Shown here piece after piece: positions 1-28,844 of a DNA stretch of 64,000 nt; the first letter of the stretch is position 1, and the number at the start of each line of letters is the position of its first letter. The notes beneath the pieces were generated by a model. It saw nothing but the letters and a program-made list of their open reading frames with translations. It did not search any database and was not told where the DNA came from. The DNA is from Heteronotia binoei. Its lineage: Eukaryota. The stretch covers positions 16,864,001-16,928,000 of the forward strand of contig NC_083226.1 of the NCBI RefSeq assembly GCF_032191835.1, in the 5' to 3' direction. A program made the translations under genes and the position numbers.

Positions 1-846
1 TGAGAAGTGAGGAGAGACAGATCAGCCAGCCTTCCGGGGCCACAAACACTTTCCCCCTTGGCCTTGTGGAAGAACCGACCCAGGAGAATCTCCAGGGTTG
101 GGGTTGAGGAAGGTAGCTACGGCTTGGCTTTGCAGGTGGGTCACCAGGGTTGGCTTGATAGGTGGAGGTCAGAATTTGCCCCTGGTCATGCAGGATGTTT
201 GCAGTGGTCGCCTTGGCAGTTCTCTCTTCTGGGCAACCCCTGTGGCTTCCTCCCACCTGGCTTTCTCAGTCACTGTCCTGAATGCCTTCTCAGTTGTGCT
301 CCCTGTGCTGGGTGGTTCAGCCTCGGGGCTGTCCACTTCGCCCTCCCCGTTTCCTCACGTTCACTGCCCACACCCAGCATGGACACAAGTGTTCTGCCTT
401 CCTTGTGTGCTTTAAGGCTTGCCTCTTGTCAGCCAGGTCTGGACTGCTCTTCCCTCCCAGCGGATGCTGTCGTCCCTCCAGGCGTCTCCTCCATGTCATA
501 GTTGAAGAGGGGTGAATCCCAGGCCTTGTATCTCTGGTGCGCTGCCAGTTCTAAGCTTGCTTGAGGCATGGTGGTCACCAAACCCACACAGACCCTTGAT
601 CCCCAGCTTCAGACTCCTGCTCCAGCAAAAGAGTAGCTGCTGGTCTGGAGCCATTCAGGGGCCCTCTGGCTCCCAGATATTTGAGCTTAGGCCATCAGGG
701 GCCACCACATGTCACTTCACATGACTCCAATAGCAGAGTTCTGTCTAGATTGTCCTTCAGGTCCAAGGCAGTGGCTGCCAGTGAGGCTGCGGGGAACAAG
801 ATCGTTCCATTCCGTTTCTCTCCCTCTCTCTGTCCCCCTGTGGCAG

Positions 847-982
847 GGGACGCTGGTGGCCGGCTGCTTCCACGACGTGCTGCTGCTGTATCTCAAGGCC
901 CTGAACGAGACGCTGCAGGAAGGTGGAACCAAGCAGAACACCAGCCGCATCCTGGAGAAGATGAGGGGCCTGAAATTCCAGG
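847..982 (+). CDS. NPR2-like ectodomain gene, copy 1, exon 4 (exons 1-3 lie left of the window)
   Basis: cag|GGG...CAG G|gt, 136 nt; GTLVAGCFHDVLLLYLKALNETLQEGGTKQNTSRILEKMRGLKFQ matches NPR2 exon 4 ([24 protein letters not shown]..KMQG). Confidence 0.93.
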
Positions 983-1631
983 GTATTGGAGGCTTGGCTT
1001 AGGGGAAAGAGTGGCCGGGGGTTGGGGGACGGGGAGGTTGCCAGGAATTTGGGACTGGGGTTGGGGGGAGGCAGGAAGTTGGTGCCCTGGGCTGAGACAG
1101 ATCAGGCCAGGAGGGGGTGGGAATGGCAGAAGGGGGCTGGCTTTAGAGAGGAGCTGCCCCAGAGCCCGTCCAAGAGGTTAACTCAGCCATGGGTCACGAA
1201 TGACAGCGGATGCTGGGATCCTCAAAGAAGAAGAAGAGTTGTTTCATGCCCCACCCTTCACTACCCGGAGGAGCCTTGGAGAGGCTTTCAATCACCTTCC
1301 CTTCCTCTTCACACAACAGGCACCCTGTGAGGTAGGTGGGTGGGGCCGAAACTAGGCAGGGGCCGTGGGGGCATCGCCCTCTCCCAAATCTGCCAGACAC
1401 ACCCACTCCTGATCCCCTGACCCCCCTCTCCTCTTGTTTATGCTGCTTTAATTAAATCAACGCCCCCTGGAGCCCCCTCCAGAAAAAAATCCTAGATATG
1501 CGCCTGTGGCTGAGAGAGCTTTGAGGGAACTATGGCTGGCCCTGGGTCACCCAGCTGGCTTCATGTGGGAGAGGACTAGAGAATCGAACCCGGTTCTCCA
1601 GATTAGAGTCCACTGCTCTTAACCACTACAC

Positions 1632-1767
1632 CAGGGGTAGGGAACGTTGGCTCTCCAGATGTTTTTTTGCCTACAACTTCCATCAGCACCAGCCATTGGC
1701 CATGCTGGCTGGGGCTGATGGGAGTTGTAGGCAAAAAACATCTGGAAAGCCAATGTTCCTACCCCTG
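1632..1767. mobile_element. Palindromic hAT-type MITE inserted in a reverse-strand tRNA-SINE (paralogous copy at about 21953-22089)
   Basis: caggggtag...ctacccctg TIRs; 8-bp TSD cactacac (perfect in copy 2, one mismatch in copy 1). Confidence 0.85.
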
Positions 1768-1810
1768 CAGTACACCAAACTGCCTCTCCCTCCCTGCCCC
1801 CCCCTTCCAG

Positions 1811-1905
1811 GTGTCACTGGGACGGTGAGCCTCAATAGACACAATGACCGAGAGATGGATTTTGACCTGTGGGCCATGAGGGATGTGGAGAGCGGAGAAT
1901 TCCAG
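1811..1905 (+). CDS. NPR2-like copy 1, exon 5
   Basis: ccag|GT...CAG|gt, 95 nt, phase 1 to 0; GVTGTVSLNRHNDREMDFDLWAMRDVESGEFQ vs NPR2 [32 protein letters not shown]. Confidence 0.93.
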
Positions 1906-2161
1906 GTGTGTGTATGGGGGGGGGGAGGTGTCTGCCACAATAGGTGGGGGAGAGTCCCCAAGCAGCCCCACTGGGTCTCTGAATGGGCTGGTATGCCCCA
2001 AAAAGCTACTAGAGAGACCTGAGTGGGAGTAGGGGACCTGAAGGTGGTGGGAGGTGGAACGCCAGGGCCTCCATTGGGAGGGGGTTCTGGGAAGTTGTAA
2101 CAGACATGGAGGAAGGTGCCCCCTGGGTCTGTGGTCTGAATCCAGCCCCTTCTTCCCACAG

Positions 2162-2344
2162 GTGGTGGCTCAATTTGTGGGCACAGAGAATCAGATGAAC
2201 TGGCTGGGGCCCATCCACTGGAAGAAGGGGAGCCCTCCTCTCGACAACCCGCCCTGTGTCTTCGACATGGATGACCCCTCCTGTGGTAAGAGTGGGCGTG
2301 TCCAAGGGTTAGAGGGACTTCATCTCACTGTCCTGCCACAGTAG
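2162..2344 (+). CDS. NPR2-like copy 1, exon 6 (ancestral donor probably at 2291; read-through stop ends 2344)
   Basis: acag|GTG; VVAQFVGTENQMNWLGPIHWKKGSPPLDNPPCVFDMDDPSCGK vs NPR2 [26 protein letters not shown]; read-through adds SGRVQGLEGLHLTVLPQ then TAG. Confidence 0.88.
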   Translation: MVAQFVGTENQMNWLGPIHWKKGSPPLDNPPCVFDMDDPSCGKSGRVQGLEGLHLTVLPQ

Positions 2345-3407
2345 CCGTTCCTAAACCCTTTCATCCCCTCTGCCACCCCCAGTGGTGATAAGTCTGCCAG
2401 GCAGGACAGCTCAGAGTAGGAATGTTCAAACGCCTGCCATTTTGCCTCACGTTCTGCTCTCTGGTTGGGAGCACAGAGCTGGTTCTTCACCAAACGGTTT
2501 GGCGATTCACAAGCTGCCGACATCTTTTTATTGGGTAAGTTTGTGCATATCCATACAGTACGGTTGGCATTATTCCACATCTGTGTGCTCTCACACATCT
2601 GAATGGGAGTTCTGGTTTCCTCCTCTCGTGTAGACCCGCTGTCACTGCTCCTGCATGGCAGCCGATCCTAAAAACAGACAGCAAATTGTTCAGTCTGATA
2701 GTAATGATGGTTTATTTCTTACCATTTGGTGCTCATTTTATTGCTGGTGATCATTGGAGGTTTTCACACATGCACATTTTTGCTCAGCCTTATGGGATTT
2801 TAGTTGTCTCTCCATGTCATTTAATCATCTGAAGGAGCCTCAGTTTCCCCAGCTGCACAGAGGCAAGAGACGCTGGAAAGAGAGAAGGAAATGAAACCGA
2901 AGCCCCACAGCTTGTGCCCTTCTCTCCATCCCCACCGCTGAGTCGCTTTTGGGTGGTTTCTGATAGAGCGCTTAGCCAGTTGGACGCATTTGTCTTCAGA
3001 ACAAGACACTGAGCCAATCCAGATTGGAAAGTGAAGCCTGAGTAATTTACAGTGCTTTGTGATGGGCATTCATGTTGCCATCCCCAGTGTGCCCTTCCAC
3101 CCACACTCTGCAGGCTGAAGTGGGGGTTCCGATCAGAGAGGATGGTCCTCTCCCCCCCCCCCCCAAGTAGGGATGTTCTAACACTTCTCAGTTCATCTCA
3201 TGATCTGCTTCCTGATTGGAGGAGGGAACTGGTGGATTGCCAATCAGTTTGGCCATACCAGAGAATCTCAGGCCTCTGTCCCAGGTAAGTTTTTGCATAT
3301 GCAAACGATATAATGCAGTCAGCAGAATTTTGTACATCCCAGTGGAAGTCCTGCCTACACCCAAGATACTTGTTATCTCTGCTCCCTGCTCAGCAGTGAG
3401 TCATAAA

Positions 3408-3413
3408 AATAAA
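3408..3413 (+). terminator. Candidate poly(A) signal of copy 1 (copy 2 equivalent at 23713-23718)
   Basis: AATAAA about 1.05 kb after the read-through stop in both copies, followed by a GT/T-rich stretch. Confidence 0.4.
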
Positions 3414-5294
3414 CGTTGAGAAAATGAATTGGTTGAACAATGATTATAAATTTTGTAGTGGTTTTAATGTTTGGTCGTGATCTCATTGAGAACTGGAGGG
3501 CATAGTGCACAGAGCTCAAATTGGCACAGGTTGTGTGGTTGTGACCTCTTGTGAAGCCAAGTTGTGTGGGCAACCCCATCGGTGACCCCACAAGCACCAT
3601 CCCAGATCCCCTTGGGGATTCATGTTCCCATCAAGTCTCCTCCTGGGGCCAGCTGTGGGCCTGCCTCAGCAGAAGTGACGCTCTCCTGCCCGGCTCCAGA
3701 TGCGAGACATCCCATTGCCTGGTTCAGCAGGGTCTGCATCGACCCACCCGGAATGGATGCTGCCCCCCCCAGCAGCTTACAGGTGAGGAAGGGGCTTGGG
3801 AAACTCCTCCACACAAACAGAAGCCTTGTGCCTGCACACTGGGGGGGGGATTCACAAGAAGGCTGGTTGGGGTCACTCTGGGAAGGGACTGCCCTCTCTG
3901 GGTGGCTCCTGGGCAGCTGGATGTCCTCAATGGGTCCTCCTTCATTTGGGGATCACTCCTTTTCTAGAGGGACAAGGCTGCATGACCATGACTCTCCCCT
4001 CCCCCTCCAGCCAGGCACTCAGAAGGAGAACTTCAGTGGAGACTCCAGTTCCTGCGACTAGCTCATCGGTGACCTTGTGGAGGTGAAGGATTGTGAGGAA
4101 GGACCAGGGAGAGGTGTGTGTGTGTGTAGAGCTGGTGGGCATTGTGAGGTCAAAGAGGGAGGGGCAGTTGCTAAAGACAGCTGAGAGACCCCCCACTGAA
4201 AGCCCAAGGGGGATTCCTTCTCTCTCTACCACTGATGTTCTCCCTCCAGATCTCAGAAGCTCTTTCATAGCTAGAGGGAGAGGTGAGCCTTGCTGGGCAC
4301 CAGGCCTGTAACCTCTCAGGGGTCTTTTCTCAGCCACCCCTGTGAATTTGACAGAGGTGGGCTTGCTCTCCAGTGGGCTAACACATCTTCCATGCTTTCG
4401 GGGGCTTTCTCAGTGGCCTCTTCCATTCCCTTCACAGCATCATTGGGTACCATGACTGCCTCAAGTCTTCTGACTCTTGGTGAACAGTGGCTGGGCACTC
4501 AAGATCTCCAGTGGTGGGCTGGTCAGTTTCCAGCAGAGCAGGAAAAGTGAGTGAAACCAGGCTTTTTCCATGCACCACCCCACAATGGCAGTACCTTTCC
4601 CATTGGCGAGGCCTTCCTTCCTCCCCATCCCCCCAAAAAGGAGAGCCCCCGTGACATCACTCAGCCTTGCTATTCCTGAGCCCATTTGAAGTGGTCCTCT
4701 GTATGCTGCACTTTTGCAGGATCCCCTTCTGACCTTTCTCTCTTTCTCCATCCCTTGCTTTCTCCTCCCTGCCCCTCCGAAGAAGCTGCCACCTTGCAGA
4801 GGCAAGAAGCGGAAGAGAAGTTTTGGGATCATCTCAAGAGAGACCGACAGCTGTGTGCAGCGGTGCTTTCTCTGTGGAGGGCAGTGACCTCAGCCACAAG
4901 GAGGAAGAAGGAAGAGCTCCATTGGCTTGCAAGAAGCCAAAACCTGCCTTGTTGTAGCTGCATTTTTGAGCCCCCACCTGGTTCCTCTCTTCTCATTCCC
5001 CCCATGCCAGGCATTTCACGACTGAGTGCTGGAAGCAGACCTTTGGCTCTTGTGGCATCTCCAGGAGGGGGTGGAACCTCCAGTGGACAAGGGGCCTCCC
5101 TCTCAGTCACTTGGCTGTGGGCTGCTTTGGGGAACACCTTGTTCCTCACGTCAGGAGGTCTCTCGGCATCGTGTGAACCCGCCCTTGCCAAAGGCACATT
5201 CACCCAGCAGCCCGAAAGCTGCATTTCCAGAGGCAGTGGAGGGGGGCGCATGCCCAGGGGATGTGGATCTCCATGCCTGTGAGGGAAGTCACCT

Positions 5295-5700
5295 CTTCTC
5301 CAGCAATAGAGGACTGGTGGTCGAGATGGTGGAACTTGCAGAGATGGCCAAACTTCCGTCTTTGACAAAAGAGAAGACTTCATTTTATACCTTTATGGAT
5401 TTCTTGTGTGAAGAGCAAAAAAGGTGAACTGATGACTTATGGTTTTGAAGGTTAAAAGGCAAATACGTTTCTGCAGAAAGGTGATAAATTTCCCCTGGTC
5501 TGATACCAGGCAAAAGGTGTAATGAGGAAATGTATGGTTTTTTGTAACTGAGATCATTGGATATTCCTTCCTTCTTTTTAACTGTAGTATCTGAATTGCT
5601 ATTTTCCCTCTTTTTTGCAGGGGTTAAAGTTGTAATGAGGAAATGTATGGTTTTTGGTAACTGAGATCATTGGATATCATTCCTTCTTTTTAATTGCACA
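5295..5700 (+). mobile_element. L1-type LINE 3' end with a roughly 110-bp duplicated tail (paralogue about 25600-26090)
   Basis: LVEMVELAEMAKLPSLTKEKTSFYTFMDFL resembles the squamate L1 ORF2 C-terminus. Confidence 0.65.
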
Positions 5701-6689
5701 TGTTGTGTCCATACCTAACACCCTCTCTTAGCTGGTTTTTATAGCCATATGCTTAAGGGTAATGCTTGCAGCCAGCTGCTTGGGACTAATCCTGCAACTA
5801 CTCATCTTTGTTGTCAGCAAGCAGCTGATGATCATTTCTCTGCCTTTAGGCTAAGATAAAATGTGTGGCAAGCAGCTGGCACTGGGCTAGGAGGTGTGCG
5901 CTTTGCCATCTCTTCTGTAGGTCGGTCCTTAGCCTCCATCCGCTGCCATCTAAAGGTGTGGTTGATGCTGGAAGGTTAGAAACAACCAACTGCCTAGGGT
6001 GCCAGGAGGGGGGGGGGCGCCAAATTGGCTGCCTAATTTGCGGGGGGGGGGCCTGGTACACTGAGAGGAACCACGCTGGCCTCTCCTTACCCGTTTTGAT
6101 GCGGGCGTCTCCTTAAAATGTTCTTGTATGAGAGCGCAGGACACAACGAGGCGTCACTCACCCCTCCTGGAGAACGCTTTACGTAGACGCGCACATCGAA
6201 GCTGTAAGGGGAGGCTGGCATCGCTCCTCTCAGCAAACTGGGGGGGGGAGGGCGGAAGGTGGCCATCCCCCCCCCCTACATGCTCAGAGGAGAGTACCAG
6301 CCTCCCCTTACCTGGGCCATTTCGACCCGGGCATTTCAGTAAAGTGTTCTCTTAAGAGAACGTGCAATGCAGAGGCTTTGCTCCTGAGTGAACACTTGTT
6401 GTGTTGTGCTTTCTCTTAAGAGAACGCATTACAGAAATACAGAAGTGGCCTGGGTAAGGGGAGGTTGGCTCGCTCCTGTGAGCGCACCCGGGGGCTGGAA
6501 CTGAAGCCCGGCGCTGCATTGCGGTACTGCAAATAAGACAACAAGGGAGGGAGGGGTGTGGGTGGGCGGAGGGGAGAGTCGGTGGGGCTTGGCACTGCAT
6601 GGCGCTGCCGCAAAAAGGGCATCATGGCGTAACTTTGCCTGGACTTTATGGCATAATATCGTGCTGATTACATCTTGCATTTGGGATGT

Positions 6690-7075
6690 TCTTCCTCTGC
6701 TGATACACCACATGATCACATAGCCTTTTTGTCACTGCATCACATGACGGGCTTATGTTTAACTTACCCGTACCCCAAGATCTTCTTCACACACACCGCT
6801 ATCCATCTACTGTGTGCGTTGCTCATTTTTGTTAGCCACTTATCCTTGTTAAATTGCATCTTGTTCCCATCTGCGCACTTTCCCAGCATGTTCAGATCTC
6901 GTTGAATTCTATCTCTTATCTTCTGGTACGTTCGCTGCTCCTCCCAATTTGGTGTCATCTGCCAGTTTAATGAGTAGCCGCTCCACACCCTCATCCAGAT
7001 CACTGATAAAAGTAGCGGAAAGTATCGGGCCTTGAACCAAGCCCTGTGGCACCCCTCTGGACACCTCCTCCATTC
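6690..7075 (-). mobile_element. CR1 LINE fragment
   Basis: Reverse-strand CR1 RT-like text (RIQRDLNMLGKCADGNKMQFNKDK). Confidence 0.75.
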
Positions 7076-7088
7076 AGATGAAATGCCA

Positions 7089-7300
7089 GGGGAGGGACGG
7101 TGGCTCAGTGGTAGAGCATCTGCTTGGGAAGCAGAAGGTCCCAGGTTCAATCCCTGGCATCTCCAAAAAAGGGTCCAGGCAAGTAGGTGTGAAAAACCTC
7201 CGCTTGAGACCCTGGAGAGCCGCTGTCAGTCTGAGAAGACAATACTGACTTTGATGGACCAAGGGTCTGATTCAGTATAACGCAGCTTCATATGTTCATA
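7089..7300 (+). mobile_element. tRNA-derived SINE (Squam2-type); other copies at 48555-48770, 51180-51390 and 51395-51610
   Basis: gtggctcagtggtagagc A-box, ggttcaatccc B-box, shared tail agacaatactgactttgatggacc...gcagcttcatatgttc. Confidence 0.85.
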
Positions 7301-8116
7301 TGCCATGGACAACCATGCTTTGGGTGCGGTTCTCCAGCCAGTGCCCTATCCACCTCAGCCTCCTAGAGTCCAATCCACAGTCCCCTTGCTTACCCATCAG
7401 AACACCATGGGGGAACCCTGTCAAAAGCTTTACTGAAATCCAGGTAATTCCTCCTCCACAGCAGACGAGAGGCATGTGGAGGAAACAGTGAGTAGAAGCA
7501 CCATCAGTAACACCCTGGAAAAACAGGATAAAGCTAGATGGATGCTTAACACATGATAAAAGACACAGAGATTTTTATCTTATCAAGAGTTCAGCTTTAC
7601 TGTTATCTTGTAAAGGATTATTTAAGTACCCAGTTTGTTTGATTCTTGTCATTGACACTCAGGACTCTCTCTGCCTTCCTTCTGGCAACTGTCCTTGTCC
7701 TCAAGAAGCCAGGTCAGGGGGCCTGTCCTAAAGGTGCTCTTGAGTCCAGCTCGGCTGCCCAGAGGCAGAAACCCCCCACCATCCTCCCTGTTTCACAAGC
7801 CGGTTCCTCAGAGGGGGGCCCAGGGGAGGGAGGCCGTGGGGGCAGCCCTTCTGGGGCTCTGAGTCTTTGGCCCTGCCTGTAAGATCTCCCGACACTGCCC
7901 TGCCTGCAGTGCTGCTGCTGACTGTCCAGGGAGGCCTGTTCTGTGTCCCTCCATCCCTGTTGCCAGGATTCTCCTGCCCACCCACAGCGTCTCTCTGGCC
8001 CTGGCCTTCTCTCCCTCCATCACCATCTCACCACATCTTGTCCCATGCGGTCAGTCTGTGCTTGTTATTCCTGTTTGGTTCTTGGATCTGTTAACTGTCT
8101 TCATTATGCCATATGT

Positions 8117-8252
8117 CAGGGGTGGCCAACAGTAGCTCTCCAGATGTTTTTTGCCTACAACTCCCATCAGCCCCAGCCAGCATGACCAATGGCTGGGGCT
8201 GATGGGAGTTGTAAGCAAAAGACATCTGGAGAGCTACCGTTGGCCACCCCTG
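8117..8252. mobile_element. Palindromic hAT MITE
   Basis: caggggtggccaac...gttggccacccctg; TSD c/acatatgt (7/8). Confidence 0.88.
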
Positions 8253-10877: not shown

Positions 10878-11264
10878 NNNNNNNNNNNNNNNNNNNNNNN
10901 NNNNNNNNNNNNNNNNNNNNNNNNNNNNNNNNNNNNNNNNNNNNNNNNNNNNNNNNNNNNNNNNNNNNNNNNNNNNNNNNNNNNNNNNNNNNNNNNNNNN
11001 NNNNNNNNNNNNNNNNNNNNNNNNNNNNNNNNNNNNNNNNNNNNNNNNNNNNNNNNNNNNNNNNNNNNNNNNNNNNNNNNNNNNNNNNNNNNNNNNNNNN
11101 NNNNNNNNNNNNNNNNNNNNNNNNNNNNNNNNNNNNNNNNNNNNNNNNNNNNNNNNNNNNNNNNNNNNNNNNNNNNNNNNNNNNNNNNNNNNNNNNNNNN
11201 NNNNNNNNNNNNNNNNNNNNNNNNNNNNNNNNNNNNNNNNNNNNNNNNNNNNNNNNNNNNNNNN
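10878..11264. other. Assembly gap (387 N)
   Basis: Run of N. Confidence 1.
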
Positions 11265-15959: not shown

Positions 15960-17100
15960 TCACCGCCAGGCGCGGAGCTGCCAATGATGGAGGTGTGGGG
16001 CTGTTGCTTTGGGGGCAATCGGGGGCTCAGGAGGGCCCACCGGCAATCCCTGGCAGCCCACCGGGAGAAGCGGGCAGCATTCAGCTCTAGTTCCCGCCTG
16101 GTTCCTCCCACCTGCGGCCAGGAGAGGTGTGCGCGGGAGGGCGCAGAGGGGCGGCCCCCCCGACTTCCCCCCGCCCCCGAGGAGGCCTCTGGAGGGAGGG
16201 AGGGCCGTGCAGGGGCGCCTTTTCCGAGGGAGCGCAGCGCGGCCGCCCCACAGACGGGCTCTCCCTGCCTTCTGCTGCCGCCCAGAGCTCCTCGCCCGCC
16301 CCGTCCATGGCGCCACCGCCCCTCCTGCTGCTGCTGCTGCCGCCAGCCCTGCTGGGGGTGCCCTCCGCCGCCTCCTCCGCCCAGGCCAGCGCCGCCCCGT
16401 CGGGGGACCTGACTTTGGGGGTGCTGCTGCCGGGGCGCAACGTGAGCTACCCCTGGGCCTGGCACCGCATCAAACCCGCCCTGAGCCTGGCGCTGGAGGC
16501 CCAGCTGCGCCCCCCAGGCCTCGCCCTCCGCACCGCCTTCGCCTCCACCGAGGGCCGGGATGGCGACTGCAACCGCTATGTGGCCCTGTGGGAGGCCGCG
16601 AAGCTGAAGTGCTTCCACGACCCGGACGTGCTGCTGGGGCCGGGCTGCGGCCACCCAGGCTACTCAGTGGGGCGCTTAGCCCAGCACTGGCAGCTGCCGC
16701 TCCTTCGAGCCGGGGCCTATGCAAGAAGACGCGCAGATCTCGGCAGCGCGGTGGTGTACGCCGGTCCCCTGGGGCCTGCCCTATTCGCCTTCGTGCCCCG
16801 GCTGCACCGGCGCTTCAACTGGACCTCCCGCGCCGTCCTTGTGTACGCTGAGAAGCTCCATGACTGGCAATACCATTACGCCTTCTTCAAGCGACTTGAA
16901 GAGGCCGTCTGGATCGCCGACTTCCACCGATATGGGCAGCCCGAGGAGACGGTCCGGTTCATCCGGGCCAAGGGGCGAGGTAAGCCAGCCCCCCCCGCCC
17001 CGCCCGCCCATCCGGAGCCGCCTCTCCCGCCCTGGGAGCGGCCCCTGCCCCCACCCCTCTGGGGCACCGATCCAGGGCTTTCTTTCTGCGGGGAAACGCG
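15960..17100 (+). promoter_or_regulatory. CpG island / promoter of NPR2-like copy 2
   Basis: Very high GC and CpG density around ATG 16307 (Kozak ccgtccATGG); GC boxes upstream. Confidence 0.75.
16307..16979 (+). CDS. NPR2-like copy 2, exon 1 (signal peptide plus ANF-receptor ligand-binding domain)
   Basis: MAPPPLLLLLLPPALLG signal peptide; LTLGVLLP, YPWAWHRIKPALSLALE, HDPDVLLGPGC, HWQLPLL, FNWTSRA and FIRAKGR match NPR2/NPR1 exon 1; donor G|gtaagc, 673 nt. Confidence 0.95.
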
Positions 17101-17167
17101 GCTGAACGGAGTTCCTGGACCTCTTGGGGGAAACAAGATTATTATTTTTTTAAATGTCCAAATGTCG

Positions 17168-19836: not shown

Positions 19837-20039
19837 TGGTCTACATCTTGGGGCCCCATAAGATGTTGCAGGAGATCATGCACCAGGCACAGGCTCAGAA
19901 CATGACCAGCGGTGACTACGTCTTCATCTACCTGGACATTTGGGGGGGAAGCCTGAGAGCTGAGGGGCATCGTGAGGCCAAGAAGCCCTGGCAGAGCATG
20001 GAGAGCCAAGATACAGGAGTCCTCCGAGAGGCCTTCCAG
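19837..20039 (+). CDS. NPR2-like copy 2, exon 2
   Basis: ttag|TG...CAG|gtaaga, phase 1 to 0; VVYILGPHKMLQEIMHQAQAQNMTSGDYVFIYLD...LREAFQ. Confidence 0.95.
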
Positions 20040-20142
20040 GTAAGACCAGGACTCTGCTGCAGGGAGGGAAGGAAGGAAAGGGAGACTTGGGAGCAGAGTT
20101 CCAACCAGCTGGAGCTCCCTTGACCTTTTCCTCTAATTGCAG

Positions 20143-20256
20143 ACGGTGCTGGTGGTCGCTGCTCATGAGCCCCAAACCCCTGAATACCGGCGTTTCCAGA
20201 GCCAGCTGGTCCAGCGTGCCCAGAGGGACTTTGGTGTGGCTGTGAATGACTCCGTG
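20143..20256 (+). CDS. NPR2-like copy 2, exon 3
   Basis: gcag|ACG...GTG|gtaaat, 114 nt; TVLVVAAHEPQTPEYRRFQSQLVQRAQRDFGV. Confidence 0.95.
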
Positions 20257-21174
20257 GTAAATCTACACACCCCTGCTTGCATGCCTTCTTCTGCACTCTT
20301 ATTATGGGAGGGAGTGAAGAGCCCTTTATGAGAAGTGAGGAGAGACAGATCAGCCAGCCTTCCGGGGCCACAAACACTTTCCCCCTTGGCCTTGTGGAAG
20401 AAACGACCCAGGAGAATCCCCAGGGTTGGGGTTGAGGAAGGCAGCTACGGCTTGGCTTTGCAGGTGGGTCACCAGGGTTGGCTTGATAGGTGGAGGTCAG
20501 AATTTGCCCCTGGTCATGCAGGATGTTTGCAGTGGTCGCCTTGGCAGTTCTCTCTTCTGGGCAACCCCTGTGGCTTCCTCCCACCTGGCTTTCTCAGTCA
20601 CTGTCCTGAGTGCCTTCTCAGTTGTGCTCCCTGTGCTGGGTGGTTCAGTCTCGGGGCTGTCCACTTCGCCCTCCCCGTTTCCTCACATTCACTGCCCACA
20701 CCCAGCATGGACACAAGTGTTCTGCCTTCCTTGTGTGCTTTAAGGCTTGCCTCTTGTCAGCCAGGTCTGGACTGCTCTTCCCTCCCAGCGGATGCTGTCG
20801 TCCCTCCAGGCGTCTCCTCCATGTCATAGTTGAAGAGGGGTGAATCCCAGGCCTTGTATCTCTGGTGGGCTGCCAGTTCTAAGCTTGCTTGAGGCATGGT
20901 GGTCACCAAACCCACACAGACCCTTGATTCCCAGCTTCAGACCCCTGCCCCAGCTAAAGAGTAGCTGCTGGTCTGGAGCCATTCAGGGGCCCTCTGGCTC
21001 CCAGATATTTGAGCTTAGACCATCAGGGGCCACCACATGTCACTTCACATGACTCCAATAGCAGAGTTCTGTCTAGATTGTCCTTCAGGTCCAAGGCAGT
21101 GGCTGCCAGTGAGGCTGCGGGGAACAAGATCGTTCCATTCCGTTTCTCTCCCTCTCTCTCTCCCCCTGTGGCAG

Positions 21175-21310
21175 GGGACGCTGGTGGCCGGCTGCTTCCA
21201 CGACGTGCTGCTGCTGTATCTCAAGGCCCTGAACGAGACGCTGCAGGAAGGTGGAACCAAGCGGAACACCAGCCACATCCTGGAGAAGATGAGGGGACTG
21301 AAATTCCAGG
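21175..21310 (+). CDS. NPR2-like copy 2, exon 4
   Basis: 136 nt, phase 0 to 1; GTLVAGCFHDVLLLYLKALNETLQEGGTKRNTSHILEKMRGLKFQ. Confidence 0.95.
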
Positions 21311-22132
21311 GTATTGGAGGCTTGCCATGGGGGAAAGAGTGGCTGGGGGTTGGGGGACGGGGAGGTTGCCAGGAATTTGGGACTGGGGGTTGGGGGGAGG
21401 CAGCAAGTGGGTGCCCTGGGCTGAGACAGATCAGGCCAGGAGGGGGTGGGAATGGCAGAAGGGGGCTGGCTTTAGAGAGGAGCTGCCCCAGAGCCCGTCC
21501 AAGAGGTTAACTCAGCCATGGGTCACGAATGACAATGGATGCTGGGATCCTCAAAGAAGAAGAGTTTTTTCATGCCCCGCCCTTCACTACCCGGAGGAGC
21601 CTCGAAGGGGCTTCCAATCACCTTCCCTTCCTCTTCACACAACAGGCACTCTGTGAAGTAGGTGGGCGGGGCTGAAACTAGGCAGGGGCCGTGGGGGCAG
21701 CGCCCTCTCCCAAATCTGCCAGACACGCCCACTCCTGATCCCCTGACCCCCCTCTCGTTTATGCTCCTTTAATTAAATTAGCACCCCCTGGAGCCCCCTC
21801 CAGAAAAAAAATCCTAGATACGGGCCTGTGGCTGAGAGAACTCTGAGGGAACTATGGCTGGCCCTGGGTCACCCAGCTGGCTTCATGTGGGAGAGGACTA
21901 GAGAATCGAACCCGGTTCTCCAGATTAGAGTCCACTGGTCTTAACCACTACACCAGGGGTAGGGAACGTTGGCTCTCCAGATGTTTTTTTGCCTACAACT
22001 TTCATCAGCACCAGCCATTGGCCATGCTGGCTGGGGCTGATGGGAGTTGTAGGCGAAAAACATCTGGAAAGCCAATGTTCCTACCCCTGCACTACACCAA
22101 ACTGCCTCTCCCTCCCTGCCCCCCCCTTCCAG

Positions 22133-22227
22133 GTGTCACTGGGACAGTGAGCCTCAATGGAGACAATGAACGAGAGATGGATTTTGACCTGTGGGCCATG
22201 AGGGATGTGGAGAGCGGAGAATTCCAG
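22133..22227 (+). CDS. NPR2-like copy 2, exon 5
   Basis: 95 nt, phase 1 to 0; GVTGTVSLNGDNEREMDFDLWAMRDVESGEFQ. Confidence 0.95.
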
Positions 22228-22482
22228 GTGTGTGTATGGTGGGGGGAGGTGTCTGCCACAATAGGTGGGGGAGAGTCCCCAAGCAGCCCCACTGGGTCTC
22301 TGAATGGGCTGGTATGCCCCAAAAAGCTACTAGAGAGACCTGAGTGGGAGTAGGGGACCTGAAGGTGGAGGGAGGTGGGACGCCAGGGCCTCCATTGGGA
22401 GGGGGTTCTGGGAAGTTGTAACAGACATGGAGGAAGGTGCCCCCTGGGTCTGTGGTCTGAATCCAGCCCCTTCTTCCCACAG

Positions 22483-22665
22483 GTGGTGGCTCATTTTGTG
22501 GGCTCAGAGAACCAGACGAACTGGCTGGGGCCCATCCACTGGAAGAAGGGGAGCCCTCCTCTCAACGACCCGCCCTGTGTCTTCGACATGGATGACCCCT
22601 CCTGTGGTAAGAGTGGGTGTGTCCAAGGGTTAGAGGGACTTCATCTCACTGTCCTGCCACGGTAG
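22483..22665 (+). CDS. NPR2-like copy 2, exon 6 (ancestral donor probably at 22612; read-through stop ends 22665, giving a 467-aa precursor)
   Basis: VVAHFVGSENQTNWLGPIHWKKGSPPLNDPPCVFDMDDPSCGK, then SGCVQGLEGLHLTVLPR and TAG. Confidence 0.88.
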   Translation: MVAHFVGSENQTNWLGPIHWKKGSPPLNDPPCVFDMDDPSCGKSGCVQGLEGLHLTVLPR

Positions 22666-25600
22666 CCGTTCCTAAACCCTTTAATCCCCTCTGCCACCCC
22701 AGTGGTGATAAGTCTGCCAGGCTGGACAGCTCAGAATAGGAATGTTCAAACGCCTGCCATTTTGCCTCACGTTCTGCTCTCTGGTTGGGAGCACAGAGTG
22801 AGTCTTCACCAAACGGTTTGGCGATTCACAAGCCGCTGACATCTTTTTATTGGGTAAGTTTGTGCATATCCATACAGTACGGTTGGCATTATTCCACATC
22901 TGTGTGTTCTCACACATCTGAATGGGAGTTCTGGTTTCCTCCTCTCGCGTAGACCCGCCGTCACTGCTCGCTGCATGGCAGCCGATCCTAAAAACAGACA
23001 GAGAGCAAATTGTTCAGCCTGATAGTAATGATGGTTTATTTCTTACCATTTGGTGCTCATTTTATTGCTGGTGATCATTGGAGGTTTTCACACATGCACG
23101 TTTTTGCTCAGCCTTATGGGATTTTAGTTGTCTCTCCATGTCATTTAATCACCTGGATGAGCCTCACTTTCCCCTGCTGCACAGAGGCAAAAGATGCTGG
23201 AAAGAGAGAAGGAAATGAAACCGAAGCCCCACAGCTTGTGCCCTTCTCTCCATCCCCACCGCTGAGTCGCTTTTGGGTGGTTTCTGATAGAGTGCTTAGC
23301 CAGTTGGACGCATTTGTCTTCAGAACAAGACACTGAGCCAATCCAGAGTAATTTACAGTGCTTTGTGATGGGCAGTCATGATGCCATCCCCAGTGTACCC
23401 TTCCATCCACACTCTGCAGCCTGAAGTGGGGGTTCCGATCAGAGAGGATGGTCCTCTCCCCCCCACCCCAAGTAGGGATGTTCTAACACTTCTCAGTTCA
23501 TCTCATGATCTGCTTGCTGATTGGAGGAGGGAACTGGTGGATTGCCAATCAGTTTGGCCATACCAGAGAATCTCAGGCCTCTGTCCCAGGTAAGTTTTTG
23601 CATATGCAAACGATATAATGCAGTCTGCAGAATTTTGCACATCCCAGTGGGAGTCCTGCCTCCACCCAAGATACTTGTTATCTCTGCTTCCTGCTCAGCA
23701 GCCAGCCATAAAAATAAACATTGAGAAAATTAATTGGTTGAACAATGATTATAAATTATTGTAGTGGTTTTGATGTTTGGTCGTGATCTCATTGAGAACT
23801 GGAGGGCATAGTGCACAGAGCTCAAACTGGCACAGGTTGTGTGGTTGTGACCTCTTGTGAAGCCGAGTGGTGTGGGCAACTCCATCGGTGACCCCAGGAG
23901 CACCATCCCAGATCCCCTTGGGGATTCATGTTCCCATCAAGTCTCCTCTCGGGGCCAGCCGTGGGCCTGCCTCAGCAGAAGTGACGCTCTCCTGCCCGGC
24001 TCCAGATGCGAGACATCCCGTGGCCTGGTTCAGCAGGGTCTGCATCGACCCACCCGGAATGGATGCTGCCCCTCCAGCAGCTTACAGGTGAGGAAGGGGC
24101 TTGGGAAACTCTTCCACACAAACAGAAGCCTTGTGCCTGCACACTGGGGGGGTGGGATTCACAAGGGGGCTGATTGGGGTCAGTATGGAAAGGGACTACC
24201 CTCTCTGGGTGGATCCTGGGCGGCTTGATGTCCTCAATGGGTCCTCCGTTATTTGTGGATCACTCCTTTTCTAGAGGGACAAGGCTGCATGACCATGACT
24301 CTCCCCTCCCCCTCCAGCCAGGCACTCAGAAGGAGAACTTCAGTGGAGACTCCAGTTCCTGCAACTAGCTCATCGGTGACCTTGTGGAGGTGAAGGATTG
24401 TGAGGAAGGACCAGGGAGAGGTGTGTGTGTGTGTAGAGCTGGTGGGCATTGTGAGGTCAAAGAGGGAGGGGCAGTTGCTAAAGACACCTGAGAGACCCCC
24501 CACTGAAAGCCCAAGGGGGATTCCTTCTCTCTCTACCACTGATGTTGTCCCTCCAGAGCTCATAAGCTCTTTCACAGCTAGAGGGAGAGGTCAGCCTTGG
24601 TGGGCACCAGGCCTGTAACCTCTCAGGGGTCTTTTTTCAGCCAACCCTGTGAATTTGACAGAGGTGGGCTTGCTCTCCAGTGGGCTAGCACATCTCCTTT
24701 CATGCTCTCAGGGGTTTTCTCAACGGCATCATCATCTTCCATTCCGTTCACGGCATCATTGGGCACCATGACAGCCTCAAGTCTTCTGACTCTTGGTGAA
24801 CAGTGGCTGGGCACTCAAGATCTCCAGTGGTGGGCTAGTCAGTTTCCAGCAGAGCAGGAAAAGTGAGTGAAACCAGGCTTTTTCCACACACCACCCCACA
24901 ATGGCAGTACCTTTCCCAATGGCAAGGCCTTCCTTCCACCCCATCCCCAGAAAAAGGAGAGCCCCCGTGACAGCACTCAGCCTTGCTATTCCTGAGCCCA
25001 TTTGAAGTGGTCCTCTGTTTGCTGCACTTTTGCAGGATCCCCTTCTGACCTTTCTCTCTTTCTCCATCCCTTGCTTTCTCCTCCTTGCCTCTCCGAAGAA
25101 GCTGCCACCTTACAGAGGCAAGAAGCGGAAGAGTAGTTTTGGGATCATCTCAAGAGTGACAGACAGCTGTGTGCAGCTCAGCCGCAAGGAGGAGGAAGGA
25201 AGAGCTCCATTGGCTTGCAAGAAGCCAAAACCTGCCTTGTTGTAGCTGCATTTTTGAGTCCCCACCTGGTTCCTCTCTTCTCATTCCCCCATGCCAGGCA
25301 TTTCACGACTGAGTGGTGGAAGCAGACCTTTGGCTCTTGTGGCATCTCCAGGAGGGGGTGTGGAACCTCCAGTGGACAAGGGGCCTCCCTCTCAGTCACT
25401 TGGCTGTGGGCTGCTTTGGGGAGCACCTTGTTCCTCACATCAGGAGGTTTCTCGGTATCGTGTGAACCTGCCCTTGCCAAAGGCCCCTTCACCCAGCAGC
25501 CCGAAAGCTGCATTTCCAGAGGCAGTGGAGGAGGGCGCATGCCCAGGGGATATGGATCTCCATGCCTGTGAGGGGAAGTCACCTCTTCTCCAGCAATAGA

Positions 25601-26099
25601 GGACTGGTGGTCAAGATGATGGAACTTACAGAGATAGCCAAACCTACGTCTTTGACGAAAGAGAAGACTTAATTTTATACCTTTATGGATTTCTTGTGTG
25701 AAGAGCAAAAAAGATGAACTGATGACTTATGGTTTTGAAGGTTAAAAGGCAAATACATTTCTGCAGAAAGGTGATAAATGTCCCTTGGTCTGATACCAGG
25801 CAAAAGGTGTAATGAGGAAATGTATGGTTTTTGGTAACTGAGATCATCGGATAGCATTCCTTCTTTTCAACTATAGTATCTGAATTACAATTTTCCCTCT
25901 TTTTTGCAGGGGTTAAAGTTGTAATGAGGAAATGTATGGTTTTTGGTAACTGAGATAATCGGATTCCTTCTTTTTAATTGTGGTATCTGAATTACAATTT
26001 CCCCTCTTTTTTGCAGGGGTTAATCTGTTTACTTTTGTTTCTTTGTTCTTCCTCCCTTATTATCTGTATTTAAAACTCTCATGAAATGTTTTTAAAAAA

Positions 26100-27295
26100 C
26101 AGCACCTGTGCTTCCCTGCAGGTTCACACAATCACAGAACTGGCAGGGGCCCTAGAGGCCATTTAGTCCAACCTCCTGCTCAATGCAGGATCAGCCTGGA
26201 GCATCCCGGACAAGTGTTAGTCCAGCTGCTGCTTCAAGACTGCCAATGAGGGGGAGCTCACCACCTCTGTTGCCGGTGAGGGGTTGCTAATTCCTCTGTT
26301 GAACAGTGCTTACTGGAGAAAAGGTTTTTCCTAATATCCAGCTGGTACCTCCCGATCCTTAGTTTTAACCCAGTGTTGTGAGTCCTCTCCTCTGCTGCCA
26401 ACAGGAACAGCTCCCTGCCCTCCTCTAAGTGACAGCCCTTCAAATGCTTCAAGAGAGCTATCATGTTCCCCCTCAGCCTCCTCTTCTCCAGACTGAACTC
26501 TAGACCTCCAGGCTCTTGGTCTCCAGACCCCCGATCATCTTCCTCGCTCTCCTCTGCACCTGCTGCATTCTGTCCACATCCTTTGTGAAGTGAGGCCTCC
26601 AGAACTGCACACAACAGGGCTTTTTTTGAGCAGGAACACACAGGAACGCAGATCTGGCTGGCTTGGCATCAGGCGGAGTGGCCTGATATGCAAGTGAGCT
26701 GATAGGCCTTCAGTATAAAGAGCCCTGTGCGAAACAATGGTGATGTCACTGGGTGTGGCCTGATATGCAAATGAGTCCCTGCTGGACTTTTTCTGCAAAA
26801 AAAAGCCCTGGCACACGATACTCCAGGTGCACCTGACCAATGCTGTGTACAGTGGGACTATGATGTCTTGTAATTTGGATGTTCTGCCTGTGTTGATACA
26901 CCACAAGATGGCATTAGCCTTTTTTCTCACTCTATCACACTGGCTGCTCATCTTTAACTTCCTGTCCACCCAAGATCTTCTTCACACACACCACTACCCA
27001 GGGGCCGTTTTGTAGGGAAAAAAGCGGTGGAGCTCATCCAGGGCTTGTTATGCAGCTGCACCTACTATTCAGTGGACAAGGTGGGAAGGAGGAGGTGGAG
27101 TTGCCAGAAAGGTCCAGGAGCTGTGCTCCTGCGAGCTCCCGCTGAATCCGAGGTCTGCCACTGCCCATCCAGTGTGCGTGTTGCTCATTTTTGTTACCCG
27201 CATGTAAAACTCAGCGCTTATCCTTGTTGAGCTGCATCTTATTCACATCTGCCCACTTTTCCAGTGTGTTCAGATCTCGCTGAATTCTATCTCGG
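26100..27295 (-). mobile_element. CR1 fragments with nested hAT MITEs (about 26615-26810 and 27000-27155)
   Basis: Reverse-strand KLKMSSQCD..KKANAILWCI and FSLEKRRLRGNMI; cagggcttttt...aaaaaagccctg TIRs. Confidence 0.75.
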
Positions 27296-28730
27296 TTTTT
27301 GCCAAATCTTGTAAAACCTGCAAATGGCTCTTCGATGGGAAAGTAATAGAACAGGTTAGGCATTTCAAATGCCTAGGTCTCCACTGTAGCTGCGACATGG
27401 CTTGGTCATGTCATCGCAAATCTATCATTAACTTAGCAGCCTTTAGTGCATCAGCCATTTCTCTGTTTTGCTTTAATAGAGGCAACCAGTTTGTCTCAGC
27501 AGCTTTGAAAATCTGTAAGGCAGAAGTGATCCCACAGTTACTGTGTGGTATTGCAAGATGGATTAGTGCAGGGGTGTCGAACTCAAGAGAGCCGGATCTG
27601 CCATAAATGAGATCTTGTCGGGCTGAGCCCTGTGTGCCTATTTAAGATTTGGTAGCAGAGATATAAACTTTTTAAAGGACACAGACAAACACAACTCAAG
27701 ATGTTTTTTTAAAAAACAACAACCTTAAAACATGCTTAAAACATTAACACTTGTTGATCTTAGAGGTGCTTTCTTTGTATTTCTCCCCGGGGATCCAGGG
27801 AACTGGGCAAAGGAAGCTCTGGCTCTTTCCCTCCCTCCCCAGGGGACCTGGAGGGGGAGGAGCCTCAACCAATGGAGAAAATTGAGATTTTGCTCTGTAA
27901 CTCCTGTGTGGTTGAGCAAGCCTGGCAAAGCAAGCTGAGATGCAGAAGGAAGCCAGAGAGAGGGAGAAGGAAGCAGATAAGAGCCAGTTGCTTGGGGGCC
28001 TGATTCAGCCCCCAGGCCACATGTTTGACACTCCTGGATTAGTGCCTTTCAAGAGTTCAATCCAAATTTATAAAGAAAATCATGAATTTACCACATTGTG
28101 TCCCATATGCCACTTTTTGTCTAGAACAGTCCTCAACATGTTAGAAACTAGGATGGCTTATATCTATCAAATATTGGCTATGTGTGCACTATTCCGCTGA
28201 CTGTGGGAGCTATTTATACCAGATGCTGTCTGAATCCTCATCGTCCAAATGGATTGCCTGCATGGAGAAGAAGATACCCACCTTAGGTTTGTCTGTGGAT
28301 TCTCTCTACCTGCTCCCTCTTACAAATGCATATTATCTAATTAAACATAGAATTTTAGATATTGAATTGCAAAAACGAATCAGTGCTGCAAATACGTCTT
28401 GCTCCCCTTTGAATTTTGGAATTTCCCCCATTATTGGTCATCTGCCTTCTTATCTACCAGCTCTTCACGTTCCACAATTGCACAGAGCATCAGCAGTTAC
28501 CTATGGGAGGTATAAAAAAAAATCCCACTTTGTACATGCAACTTAAAATAAGTTGATTCATTGTCCCATATTCTTCTTTACTGCTCCCAATATGAGACTA
28601 GATGCCTTCAGTTTCTAGACCCAGTTCTGCTCAATATGGCAAGTTGCTCAGATGCGGCAAAGGTGTGCCGTCTTCTGAATGGTTTGTCATCTGAAATAAC
28701 TAAAAGGTTGCTTTATTCTTGAGTCTGGTA
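27295..28730 (+). mobile_element. Degraded RTE-X-like LINE ORF2 3' region, interrupted by a hAT MITE (27568-28036; related copy about 55088-55611)
   Basis: VIEQVRHFKCLGL...RGNQFVSAALKICKAEVIPQLLCG and GRYKK..SHILLYCSQY motifs. Confidence 0.55.
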
Positions 28731-28844
28731 ATCAAGGATCAATTGTCCAATCTGTAGCTGTATATGACTGGTTTATTCTGTTACTTCTGTATTTCTTTCT
28801 TGCCTTATTGATAATCTGATATATGCCAATAAAGGCTGACGTGT

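What the first reader, a model, noticed from the sequence alone, without database searches (positions are those of the whole stretch)
1..5700. The truncated gene is tandemly amplified and both copies stop at the same point
Seen: copy 1 has intact exons 4-6, a read-through stop at the homologous position, the same AATAAA, and about 3.4 kb of shared non-receptor sequence downstream. The truncation therefore predates the duplication. All three visible exons stayed frameshift-free while the introns took indels. Inference: a multi-copy family that probably extends left of the window, which fits function better than a single decaying fragment.
Basis: partly seen in the sequence, partly recalled or inferred. 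Interest (0 to 1): 0.75.

Follow-up and report, generated by a model that had tools for sequence, protein, structure and literature searches.

The report
Tandem truncated NPR2 receptor genes, gecko
Two neighbouring gecko genes that encode only the hormone-binding outer half of the NPR2 receptor are real sister copies at the right-hand end of a larger tandem array, and the decayed remains of the lost inner half lie behind both.

Summary
Window 1-5696 is a head-to-tail duplicate of 20329-25980, with 3.5% substitutions and 22 indels. Exons 4-6, their splice sites, the read-through stop (TAG 2342-2344 / 22663-22665) and the only AATAAA (3408 / 23713) sit at homologous places.

The genome is Heteronotia binoei.
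- Copy 2 is NCBI model P0001. Copy 1 is P0031, whose exons 1-3 are open, so that refuter fails.
- Haplotigs are excluded: exon 1 is only 76% identical in protein, and the flanks differ.
- The "non-receptor" 3.4 kb downstream is not foreign. It holds colinear, decayed NPR2 kinase-homology exons, with a frameshift and a stop shared by both copies. No membrane-anchor or cyclase relic was found. The truncation therefore predates the duplication.
- P0031's first exons come from a third downstream block, so the array continues to the left. It ends on the right in this window.

Weak points:
- Exons 4-6 differ as much as the introns do (dN/dS 0.94).
- Zero exonic indels is not significant (P about 0.25).
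- RNA does not show ends at the AATAAA.
- No DNA reads were available for depth.

The scan noted this family before on this same window (s1-333634). I found no paper on it.

The parts
1..5696 (+). Copy 1, right-hand part of the repeat unit: end of intron 3, exons 4-6 and the downstream block D. The window edge cuts it on the left.
   Evidence: Aligned to 20329-25980 at 94.98%. Identity profile.
847..982 (+). Copy 1 exon 4 (136 nt)
   Evidence: AG/GT sites and open frame. Exact match to P0031. The E4-to-E5 junction 981>1810 is seen in RNA.
1811..1905 (+). Copy 1 exon 5 (95 nt)
2162..2285 (+). Copy 1 exon 6, ending at the canonical donor G|GTAAGA
2286..2344 (+). Read-through tail (19 codons counted from 2285) and stop TAG 2342-2344
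   Evidence: ORF 2054..2344. Alignment. RNA-library contig 2279-2465 has 1 difference from copy 1, against 5 substitutions plus 1 gap column for copy 2.
3408..3413 (+). The only AATAAA of copy 1; homologous to 23713
   Evidence: RNA depth does not drop here.
3558..3782 (+). Probable relic of the kinase-homology exon carrying the VAIK...CIDPP motifs (VPIK...CIDPP here, spacing 33 against 34 residues)
   Evidence: Judged by eye from the ORFs against NPR2 protein P0038. Below BLAST significance.
4409..4563 (+). Relic kinase-homology exon (..FLH..IIG.H..LKSS. then .V.S...LKI...GL.SF.QS), broken by a 1-nt frameshift at 4475-4476 and a stop. Both lesions are shared with copy 2.
   Evidence: tblastn against 8 full-length NPR2 proteins, HMM, 0 of 100 shuffles reach the score. 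RNA junctions 4111>4436 and 4546>4783.
4850..5047 (+). Relic of the next kinase-homology exons (A...GAF.VEG.DLS.KE ... ECW.Q)
5510..5696 (+). Minisatellite of roughly 113 bp where the 95% homology ends
6673..7931 (+). Spacer element S. It has older, colinear 75-82% homology to 26866-29628. It includes 7407-7493, which resembles the first coding exon of paralogue P0004.
10878..11264 (.). Run of N between the two copies, flanked by 165-bp and 67-bp satellites. It was not filled. The spacing of the copies and their adjacency rest on this scaffold join.
16307..16979 (+). Copy 2 exon 1, with start codon and a hydrophobic leader
   Evidence: PDB NPR1 ectodomain E = 4e-30.
19837..20256 (+). Copy 2 exons 2 (19837-20039) and 3 (20143-20256)
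20329..25980 (+). Copy 2 counterpart of 1-5696: E4 21175-21310, E5 22133-22227, E6 22483-22606, TAG 22663-22665, AATAAA 23713, relics 24698-24879
26866..29628 (+). Old, gene-less spacer remnant (S') after the last unit: the right-hand edge of the array
   Evidence: No family exon lies to its right.

Best explanation
The window holds the last two head-to-tail units of a tandem array in the gecko Heteronotia binoei. The array genes descend from a duplicate of NPR2 (guanylyl cyclase B). Each unit has four parts: a spacer, six ectodomain exons, a 3.4-kb block D, and a short minisatellite. D is the decayed rest of the old gene: kinase-homology exons that are now broken, with the membrane-anchor exon and the cyclase part not detectable. 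The loss of the anchor and kinase part happened once, in an ancestor of the family, and every later duplication copied it. That is why both copies 'stop at the same point'. Copy 1 (model P0031) and copy 2 (P0001) are each other's closest relatives. Most likely they arose by one in-register unequal crossover that duplicated a whole unit of about 20.3 kb. Since then neutral sequence has diverged by about 3.5%. Exons 2-6 have drifted at roughly that rate. Exon 1, which forms much of the hormone pocket, has changed about three to four times faster. Transcripts either read through the exon-6 donor (19 extra residues, then a stop) or splice on into the relic exons of D. Either way the product has no membrane anchor, so with the exon-1 leader it should be a secreted binding domain. 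Shown: the duplication, the exon structure, the relics and their shared lesions, the sister relation, spliced RNA. Inferred: the crossover mechanism, secretion, ligand binding, and faster-than-neutral change in exon 1.
For: Duplication and coordinates. Identity of the genes: P0001 is 100% identical to copy 2's exon 1, and P0031 contains copy 1's exons 4-6 exactly and matches D of copy 1 at 100% in its last exon. Origin from NPR2: full-length squamate NPR2 proteins are 64-70% identical over exons 3-6 and are the nearest proteins with kinase and cyclase domains; PDB NPR1 gives 4e-30 against 3e-12 for NPR-C. Relics: three colinear plus-strand hits covering consecutive NPR2 positions (HMM 417-432, 434-499, 501-519) in both copies, with the same frameshift and stop; 0 of 100 shuffles reach 32.3 bits. 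Sister status: in the exon-1 tree P0001 and P0031 pair with 96/88 support inside a six-member H. binoei clade with 100/99 support. More units to the left. Right-hand edge. RNA: the E4-to-E5 junction, a read-through contig closest to copy 1, and GT..AG junctions inside D. Tandem order in another gecko: Paroedura models fuse E1-E6 to a second E2-E6.
Against: Adjacency of the two copies crosses a 387-N run and could not be checked with long reads. No genomic DNA run was available for depth. Divergence is uneven (1.2-1.5% at the left, 5% at the right), which a single event does not predict. P0002 and P0004 are sisters in exon 1 (99/93), but P0004 falls outside the other five in exons 2-6, so paralogues do exchange sequence. 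Most RNA reads on D carry copy-2 letters (33 of the 40 best sites), so expression of copy 1 rests on a few contigs from RNA libraries that may contain DNA. dN/dS in E4-E6 is 0.94.
Confidence: 0.6

Rival explanations
1. The duplicates are older and their 3' parts were homogenised. Under this reading the two units separated long ago, as their 75-82% identical spacers would suggest. Gene conversion or repeated unequal crossover then made exons 2-6 plus D nearly identical among several paralogues, while exon 1 escaped or was kept different by selection.
For: Identity drops sharply from 95% to none, and then to about 80%, at 5696/25980. There is a divergence gradient inside the tract. Exon 1 is 76% identical in protein against 88-96% for exons 2-6. 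The five paralogues form an unresolved short-branched group in exons 2-6, and P0002/P0004 change place between partitions. Some differences between copy 1 and copy 2 are shared in a patchwork with other paralogues.
Against: The exon-1 to exons-2-6 divergence ratio for this pair (0.35 against 0.09, about 3.9) is close to the family-wide ratio of end-branch lengths (0.28 against 0.085). It is also close to the Heteronotia-Gekko ratio (46% against about 18% protein divergence). So exon 1 may simply evolve faster everywhere. The two copies are sisters in exon 1 as well. The 80% spacer after copy 2 is equally expected if it is just the old flank of the last unit.
Confidence: 0.3
2. Copy 1, or both copies, is a drifting gene on its way to becoming a pseudogene. 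Its frames are still open only because the duplication is young.
For: E4-E6 change at the intron rate, dN/dS is 0.94, and there are changes at positions conserved in the family and in NPR2 (R>Q and H>Q in copy 1; R>H and DN>ND in copy 2). Zero exonic indels is not significant. The C-terminal tails differ in frame between paralogue models. Little copy-1-specific RNA was seen.
Against: The family's indel rate is 18 frameshifting events per 5.7 kb. I assume about 4% of substitutions create a stop. On those figures, two 1344-nt coding regions would both stay open with a probability of about 0.002 if the whole gene drifted. Yet P0031 and P0001 are open through all six exons, including the fast exon 1. 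Thirteen H. binoei models, and relatives in four other geckos, keep the ectodomain open. Exon contigs are very abundant in two RNA libraries, though summed over paralogues.
Confidence: 0.15
3. The duplication is an assembly artefact: two haplotypes of one locus placed in tandem on either side of a gap.
For: An N run lies between the copies, flanked by satellites. No DNA read depth could be obtained.
Against: Divergence is 3.5% in substitutions plus 22 indels. The sequences after the two copies are unrelated for about 0.9 kb and then only about 80% alike. The duplicate does not abut the gap: 5.2 kb of other sequence lies between. The two annotated proteins differ at 24% of exon-1 residues and by a 3-residue indel. 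RNA-library contigs match copy 1 in some places and copy 2 in others.
Confidence: 0.03

Closest known systems
NPR2 / guanylyl cyclase B (the parent gene)
   Same: It is the nearest full-length relative (64-70% identity over exons 3-6). The six-exon ectodomain layout is the same, with a perfect donor after exon 6. The kinase-homology exons are still recognisable as relics in the original order and on the original strand.
   Different: There is no membrane anchor, no working kinase-homology domain and no cyclase, so it cannot signal through cGMP. It is present in many tandem copies instead of one.
NPR3 / NPR-C clearance receptor (and, from my own knowledge, eel NPR-D)
   Same: It is a natriuretic-peptide-receptor ectodomain without a cyclase, and it acts by binding rather than signalling.
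   Different: NPR-C keeps a membrane anchor and a short tail and is an old, single-copy lineage. By sequence these genes are much nearer NPR1/NPR2 than NPR-C (4e-30 against 3e-12).
Soluble receptors made by intron read-through, such as sFLT1 (from my own knowledge)
   Same: The product is an ectodomain followed by a short intron-encoded tail and a stop, giving a secreted ligand trap.
   Different: sFLT1 is an alternative transcript of an intact receptor gene. Here the membrane and inner parts are gone from the gene itself, and the gene is amplified.
Tandem arrays of fast-evolving binding proteins shaped by unequal crossover (a general class)
   Same: Units are head to tail and in register. The array edge is less homogenised than the interior. 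The binding part varies most, and there are predicted read-through fusions between neighbouring units.
   Different: A natriuretic-peptide-receptor ectodomain has not, in the papers I could search, been described as the unit of such an array.

Membership tests
Natriuretic peptide receptor guanylyl cyclases (NPR1/NPR2) | Extracellular ANF_receptor-type ligand-binding domain | tested here: met
   Pfam PF01094 on the exon-1 and exon-2 ORFs (weak, because single exons were scanned). PF01094 is precomputed for all the models. PDB NPR1 ectodomain E = 4e-30.
Natriuretic peptide receptor guanylyl cyclases (NPR1/NPR2) | Single membrane-spanning segment after the ectodomain | tested here: not met
   tblastn and an HMM of 8 NPR2 proteins found no relic of the anchor or juxtamembrane exon in 2286-8000 or 22607-30000. 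By eye, none of the predicted tails of the gecko ectodomain-only models shows a membrane-spanning hydrophobic stretch; P0050, a 513-aa Logan protein of unknown species, does carry one.
Natriuretic peptide receptor guanylyl cyclases (NPR1/NPR2) | Intact kinase-homology domain | tested here: not met
   Only broken relics remain, with a frameshift and a stop shared by both copies.
Natriuretic peptide receptor guanylyl cyclases (NPR1/NPR2) | Guanylate cyclase catalytic domain | tested here: not met
   No hit anywhere in the 64-kb window at E up to 10.
NPR3 / NPR-C type clearance receptors | Membership of the NPR-C sequence lineage, with a membrane anchor and a short cytoplasmic tail | tested here: not met
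   Closer to NPR1/NPR2 than to NPR-C. No anchor.
Tandem gene array (segmental, head to tail) | Two or more units in the same orientation, with homology covering both genic and intergenic sequence | tested here: met
   1-5696 matches 20329-25980 on the same strand, through introns and 3.35 kb downstream. An older homologous spacer lies after each copy.
Tandem gene array (segmental, head to tail) | Further units beyond the two seen | tested here: inconclusive
   A third D block upstream of copy 1 is inferred from the 5' exons of P0031. Nine models sit on the same chromosome.
Tandem gene array (segmental, head to tail) | Real in the genome: normal read depth and reads that span the units | not testable with these tools
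   No whole-genome DNA run was offered. Only RNA libraries were laid.
Secreted decoy or binding protein | Signal peptide, secretion and ligand binding | not tested
   Copy 2 has a start codon followed by a leucine-rich leader, which I did not run through a predictor. Copy 1's start lies outside the window. Several NCBI models splice past the leader.

The most novel reading that the evidence does not exclude
The array is a gecko-specific repertoire of secreted binding proteins built on the NPR2 ectodomain. After each whole-unit duplication, the pocket-forming exon 1 changes about three times faster than neutral sequence (24% protein divergence beside 3.5% intron divergence), while the rest of the unit merely drifts or is homogenised. 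That would make it a diversifying recognition system for peptides other than the animal's own natriuretic hormones, rather than a single hormone decoy.
Probability: 0.3. Interest if true: 0.8.

Novelty: new variant of a known kind. Interest (0 to 1): 0.55.

Why it matters
Cyclase-less natriuretic-peptide receptors are known as a single anchored gene (NPR-C). Here a cyclase receptor lost its anchor and inner half, and the remaining binding domain was then amplified in tandem. The relics behind each copy show how the truncation came about: by decay of a longer duplicate, not by a clean break after exon 6. They also give a marker, the shared frameshift and stop, for tracing the family's origin in other geckos. 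The contrast between a fast exon 1 and a drifting remainder in a young sister pair gives a simple test of whether the family is under diversifying selection. For annotation, it explains why the automatic models have such varied and probably meaningless N- and C-termini: exons are borrowed from the neighbouring unit's relic block.

Tried and rejected
Copy 1's exons 1-3 are therefore known only from the NCBI protein P0031.
- The AATAAA as the 3' end: RNA depth goes on past it, and no cluster of molecule ends lies there. Its conservation is expected by chance.
- The frameshift-free exons as evidence of constraint: 1.4 events expected, P(0) = 0.25.
- Loose-end sequences of RNA contigs (for example after 2289) were looked for in the window and not found. 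Where the abundant transcripts continue after exon 6 stays open.
- The HMM search for relics gave only weak E-values on its own (0.007-0.98). The case rests on colinearity, both copies agreeing, tblastn (1.6e-5 in the 13-kb set of both downstream blocks) and the shuffles.
- Three literature searches found nothing on this family.
Searches used single ORFs by reference or database protein ids. The joined E4-E6 codons were used only inside local scripts for counting.
- The N run was not filled.


Full report
**What is there.** A self-comparison shows one long direct repeat. Window 1-5696 aligns to 20329-25980 on the same strand, at 94.98% over 5718 columns with 88 gap columns. Without gaps, identity is 98.8% at the left edge of the window and falls gradually to about 95% near 5696. 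The window edge cuts the repeat on the left, so its true left end is unknown. A run of 387 N (10878-11264), flanked by 165-bp and 67-bp satellites, lies between the copies. I did not fill it. The 20.3-kb spacing and the adjacency of the copies depend on that scaffold join.

**The genes.**
- The exon-1 ORF of copy 2 matches the natriuretic-peptide-receptor ectodomain. PDB NPR1 gives E = 4e-30 and NPR-C gives 3e-12. Pfam ANF_receptor matches are weak because single exons were scanned.
- The word search identifies the genome as Heteronotia binoei. Copy 2 is the NCBI model P0001, 'atrial natriuretic peptide receptor 2-like'.
- A second search with exons 3-6 shows that the nearest proteins with kinase and cyclase domains are squamate NPR2, at 64-70% identity.
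- Fitting P0001 to the DNA gives copy 2's exons: E1 from ATG 16307 to 16979, E2 19837-20039, E3 20143-20256, E4 21175-21310, E5 22133-22227, and E6 22483-22606 up to the canonical donor.
- The homologous copy-1 exons are 847-982, 1811-1905 and 2162-2285. Their splice sites are identical and their frames are open.
- Read-through of the exon-6 donor gives 19 codons and then TAG at 2342-2344 and 22663-22665. The single AATAAA of each copy is at 3408 and 23713.

**Copy 1 is annotated and complete.** The peptides of copy 1's exons 4-6 occur exactly in one database protein, P0031 (671 aa, same chromosome). Its last exon matches 5100-5424 of the window at 100%. P0031 has open exons 1-3 that align to the other family members with only a 3-residue deletion, which P0004 shares. 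This removes the refuter 'copy 1 exons 1-3 are disabled', as far as an automatic model can.

**Not haplotigs.**
- The copies differ by 3.5% in substitutions and by 22 indels.
- The sequence after each copy is unrelated for about 0.9 kb and then only 75-82% alike.
- The two proteins differ at 24% of exon-1 residues.
- RNA-library contigs match copy 1 in some stretches and copy 2 in others.
- Read depth could not be tested, because no genomic DNA run was offered.

**The downstream block is the wreck of the receptor's inner half.** tblastn with eight full-length NPR2 proteins finds colinear matches on the plus strand in both copies:
- the FLH..IIGHHGSLKSSN segment at 4409-4474 and 24698-24790;
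- the VVDSRFVLKITDYGLASFRQS segment at 4477-4563 and 24793-24879;
- the ALRNGAFYVEGMDLSPKE...ERCWAQ segment at 4850-5047, found by tblastn in copy 1 only.

The first two segments are contiguous in NPR2. Here they are two bases apart, which is a 1-nt loss, and an in-frame stop follows. Both lesions are identical in the two copies. An HMM of NPR2 places the pieces at consecutive model positions (417-432, 434-499, 501-519), with weak E-values taken one at a time. None of 100 shuffles of the block reaches the observed 32.3 bits; the best shuffle gives 28.9. By eye, 3558-3782 and 23863-24087 look like the preceding exon: VPIK and CIDPP at the spacing of VAIK and CIDPP in NPR2. That is a reading, not a test.

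No trace of the membrane-anchor exon or the cyclase domain was found. The truncation was therefore not a clean break after exon 6. A longer NPR2 duplicate lost its anchor and let its kinase part decay, and that state was then copied. This is stronger support for 'truncation predates duplication' than the shared stop. It also agrees with the family at large: all gecko relatives of under 700 aa (Heteronotia, two Gekko species, Sphaerodactylus, Paroedura) end just after exon 6. Many share the first read-through codons (GKS.C.QG), and one Gekko model ends in the same relic exon.

**Extent of the array.** P0031 begins with about 110 residues that match D-block sequence at only 57-70% (3212-3283, 4386-4523 and 4850-4948, and their copy-2 counterparts). 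These residues therefore come from a third D block upstream of copy 1's exon 1, so at least one more unit, or its D block, lies to the left. My two searches found 13 H. binoei models, nine on the same 186.7-Mb chromosome and four on a 0.5-Mb scaffold. An earlier follow-up on this window (s1-333634) speaks of forty or more copies in geckos only. I can confirm only that ectodomain-only forms came from geckos alone in these two searches, and that non-gecko hits were full-length NPR2.

On the right, the spacer after copy 1 (6673-7931) has an old, interrupted counterpart after copy 2 (26866-29628). No family exon follows it. The array ends in this window. In Paroedura, three automatic models join E1-E6 to a second E2-E6, which implies the same head-to-tail order there. 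The phases of exon 6 and exon 2 are compatible.

**How the two copies relate.** Per exon, the P0031-to-P0001 protein identities are:

| Exon | Identity |
|---|---|
| E1 | 76% |
| E2 | 90% |
| E3 | 92% |
| E4 | 96% |
| E5 | 91% |
| E6 | 88% |

In a tree of exon 1, the two are sisters (96/88) within a six-member H. binoei clade (100/99). In exons 2-6, five of the six form an unresolved short-branched group (this second tree is the quick search, because the careful one did not finish).

The exon-1 to exons-2-6 distance ratio for this pair is about 3.9. That is close to the family-wide ratio of end-branch lengths (about 3.3) and to the Heteronotia-Gekko ratio. I therefore prefer a single whole-unit duplication followed by fast change in exon 1.

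Later homogenisation of the 3' part is a serious rival. Divergence is graded within the tract. P0002 and P0004 change place between the two partitions. Several differences between copy 1 and copy 2 are shared in a patchwork with other paralogues. Only the DNA of copy 1's 5' half can decide.

**Selection.** In E4-E6 there are 13 differences in 354 nt, of which 10 are replacements and 3 are silent. That gives dN 0.037, dS 0.039 and a ratio of 0.94, against 3.5% divergence outside exons. With 22 indel events in 5.7 kb, 1.4 are expected in the exons, so seeing none has P = 0.25. These three exons give no evidence of constraint.

The better argument for function is that all six exons are open in both copies, including the fast exon 1. 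From the local indel rate and an assumed 4% of substitutions creating stops, I estimate about 0.002 for two drifting 1344-nt frames to stay open. That figure is an inference, not a tool result.

**RNA (one call, 6000 bases).**
- The E4-to-E5 junction (981>1810, GT..AG) is seen in two raw-read runs and in one contig run.
- Exon contigs reach summed word depths of 750-1440 in two metatranscriptomic libraries. Paralogues are pooled in those figures.
- A contig covering 2279-2465 crosses the exon-6 donor unspliced. It differs from copy 1 at one site and from copy 2 at five sites plus one gap column.
- Inside D there are plus-strand GT..AG junctions (4111>4436, 4546>4783) that coincide with the relic exons.
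- Depth in D (10-38x in one run) falls to nothing after about 5600, close to the end of the repeat. D therefore belongs to a transcription unit.
- Depth does not fall at the AATAAA.
- Of the 40 best-supported differing letters in D, 33 are copy 2's letters. Most of those reads therefore come from copy 2 or other paralogues, not from copy 1.
- The sequence that abundant transcripts carry after exon 6 (the loose end at 2289) is not in the window.

**Gene models.** The NCBI models take their ends from three sources: cryptic donors 11 or 21 nt past the canonical one, relic exons, and the previous unit's D block spliced into an internal acceptor just after the leader. These tails differ in frame between paralogues, and I regard them as incidental.

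**Comparison with what is known.** In action this should resemble NPR-C or intron-read-through decoys such as sFLT1 (my own knowledge). By descent it is a truncated NPR2. It fails the membership features of a receptor cyclase (anchor, kinase-homology domain, cyclase) and is not of the NPR-C lineage. Three literature searches found no description of the family.

**Verdict.** The finding is real and mostly rightly read. It adds the array context to a family the scan had already noted on this same window.

Noticed in passing
window 1663-1750, 8147-8234, 14945-15032, 15838-15925, 21985-22072: A palindromic element of about 88 bp that looks like a MITE, with terminal inverted repeats. It lies in intron 4 of both copies and in the spacer. 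It attracts very high RNA depth (about 14,000 summed word depth in two libraries), with opposite-strand and 'goes back' joints, as an abundant genome-wide hairpin repeat would.
   Followed up: partly
window 9454-10711, 11200-12035, 13054-13440: Three satellites (165-bp, 67-bp and 101-bp units) fill the spacer between the two gene copies. The N run starts inside the 67-bp array.
   Followed up: no
window 2297 and 22618 (fifth read-through codon): The read-through tail has Cys in copy 2 and in many relatives (GKSGC / GKSEC), but Arg in copy 1 and in P0004. A free cysteine just after the ectodomain recalls the juxtamembrane disulfide of the NPR-C dimer (my own knowledge). It is not needed in every copy.
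   Followed up: no
proteins P0001, P0004, P0005, P0031 (exon 1 near window 16382): Several NCBI models enter exon 1 through an internal acceptor just after the leader, from upstream exons in the spacer (7407-7493-like) or in the previous unit's D block. Such products would lack a signal peptide. They are either annotation noise or read-through transcripts between units.
   Followed up: partly
proteins P0026, P0029, P0030 (Paroedura picta): Automatic models join a complete ectodomain (E1-E6) to a second E2-E6. This points to tandem neighbours and phase-compatible splicing from exon 6 to the next unit's exon 2.
   Followed up: partly
window 26258-26969 (-), 34625-35005 (+), 39804-41043 (+), 52373-52765 (-): Fragments of LINE reverse-transcriptase ORFs. 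The first sits directly after the end of copy 2's D block, where homology to copy 1's flank is missing.
   Followed up: no
window 44966-45676 and 59011-59714: Arrays of 107-bp repeats, 14 kb apart, with related single units at 17167-17430 (intron 1 of copy 2), 48088, 55730 and 57868. This is a dispersed repeat family, not part of the gene duplication.
   Followed up: no
ORFs of 110 aa or more in this part look like transposon or low-complexity sequence.
   Followed up: no
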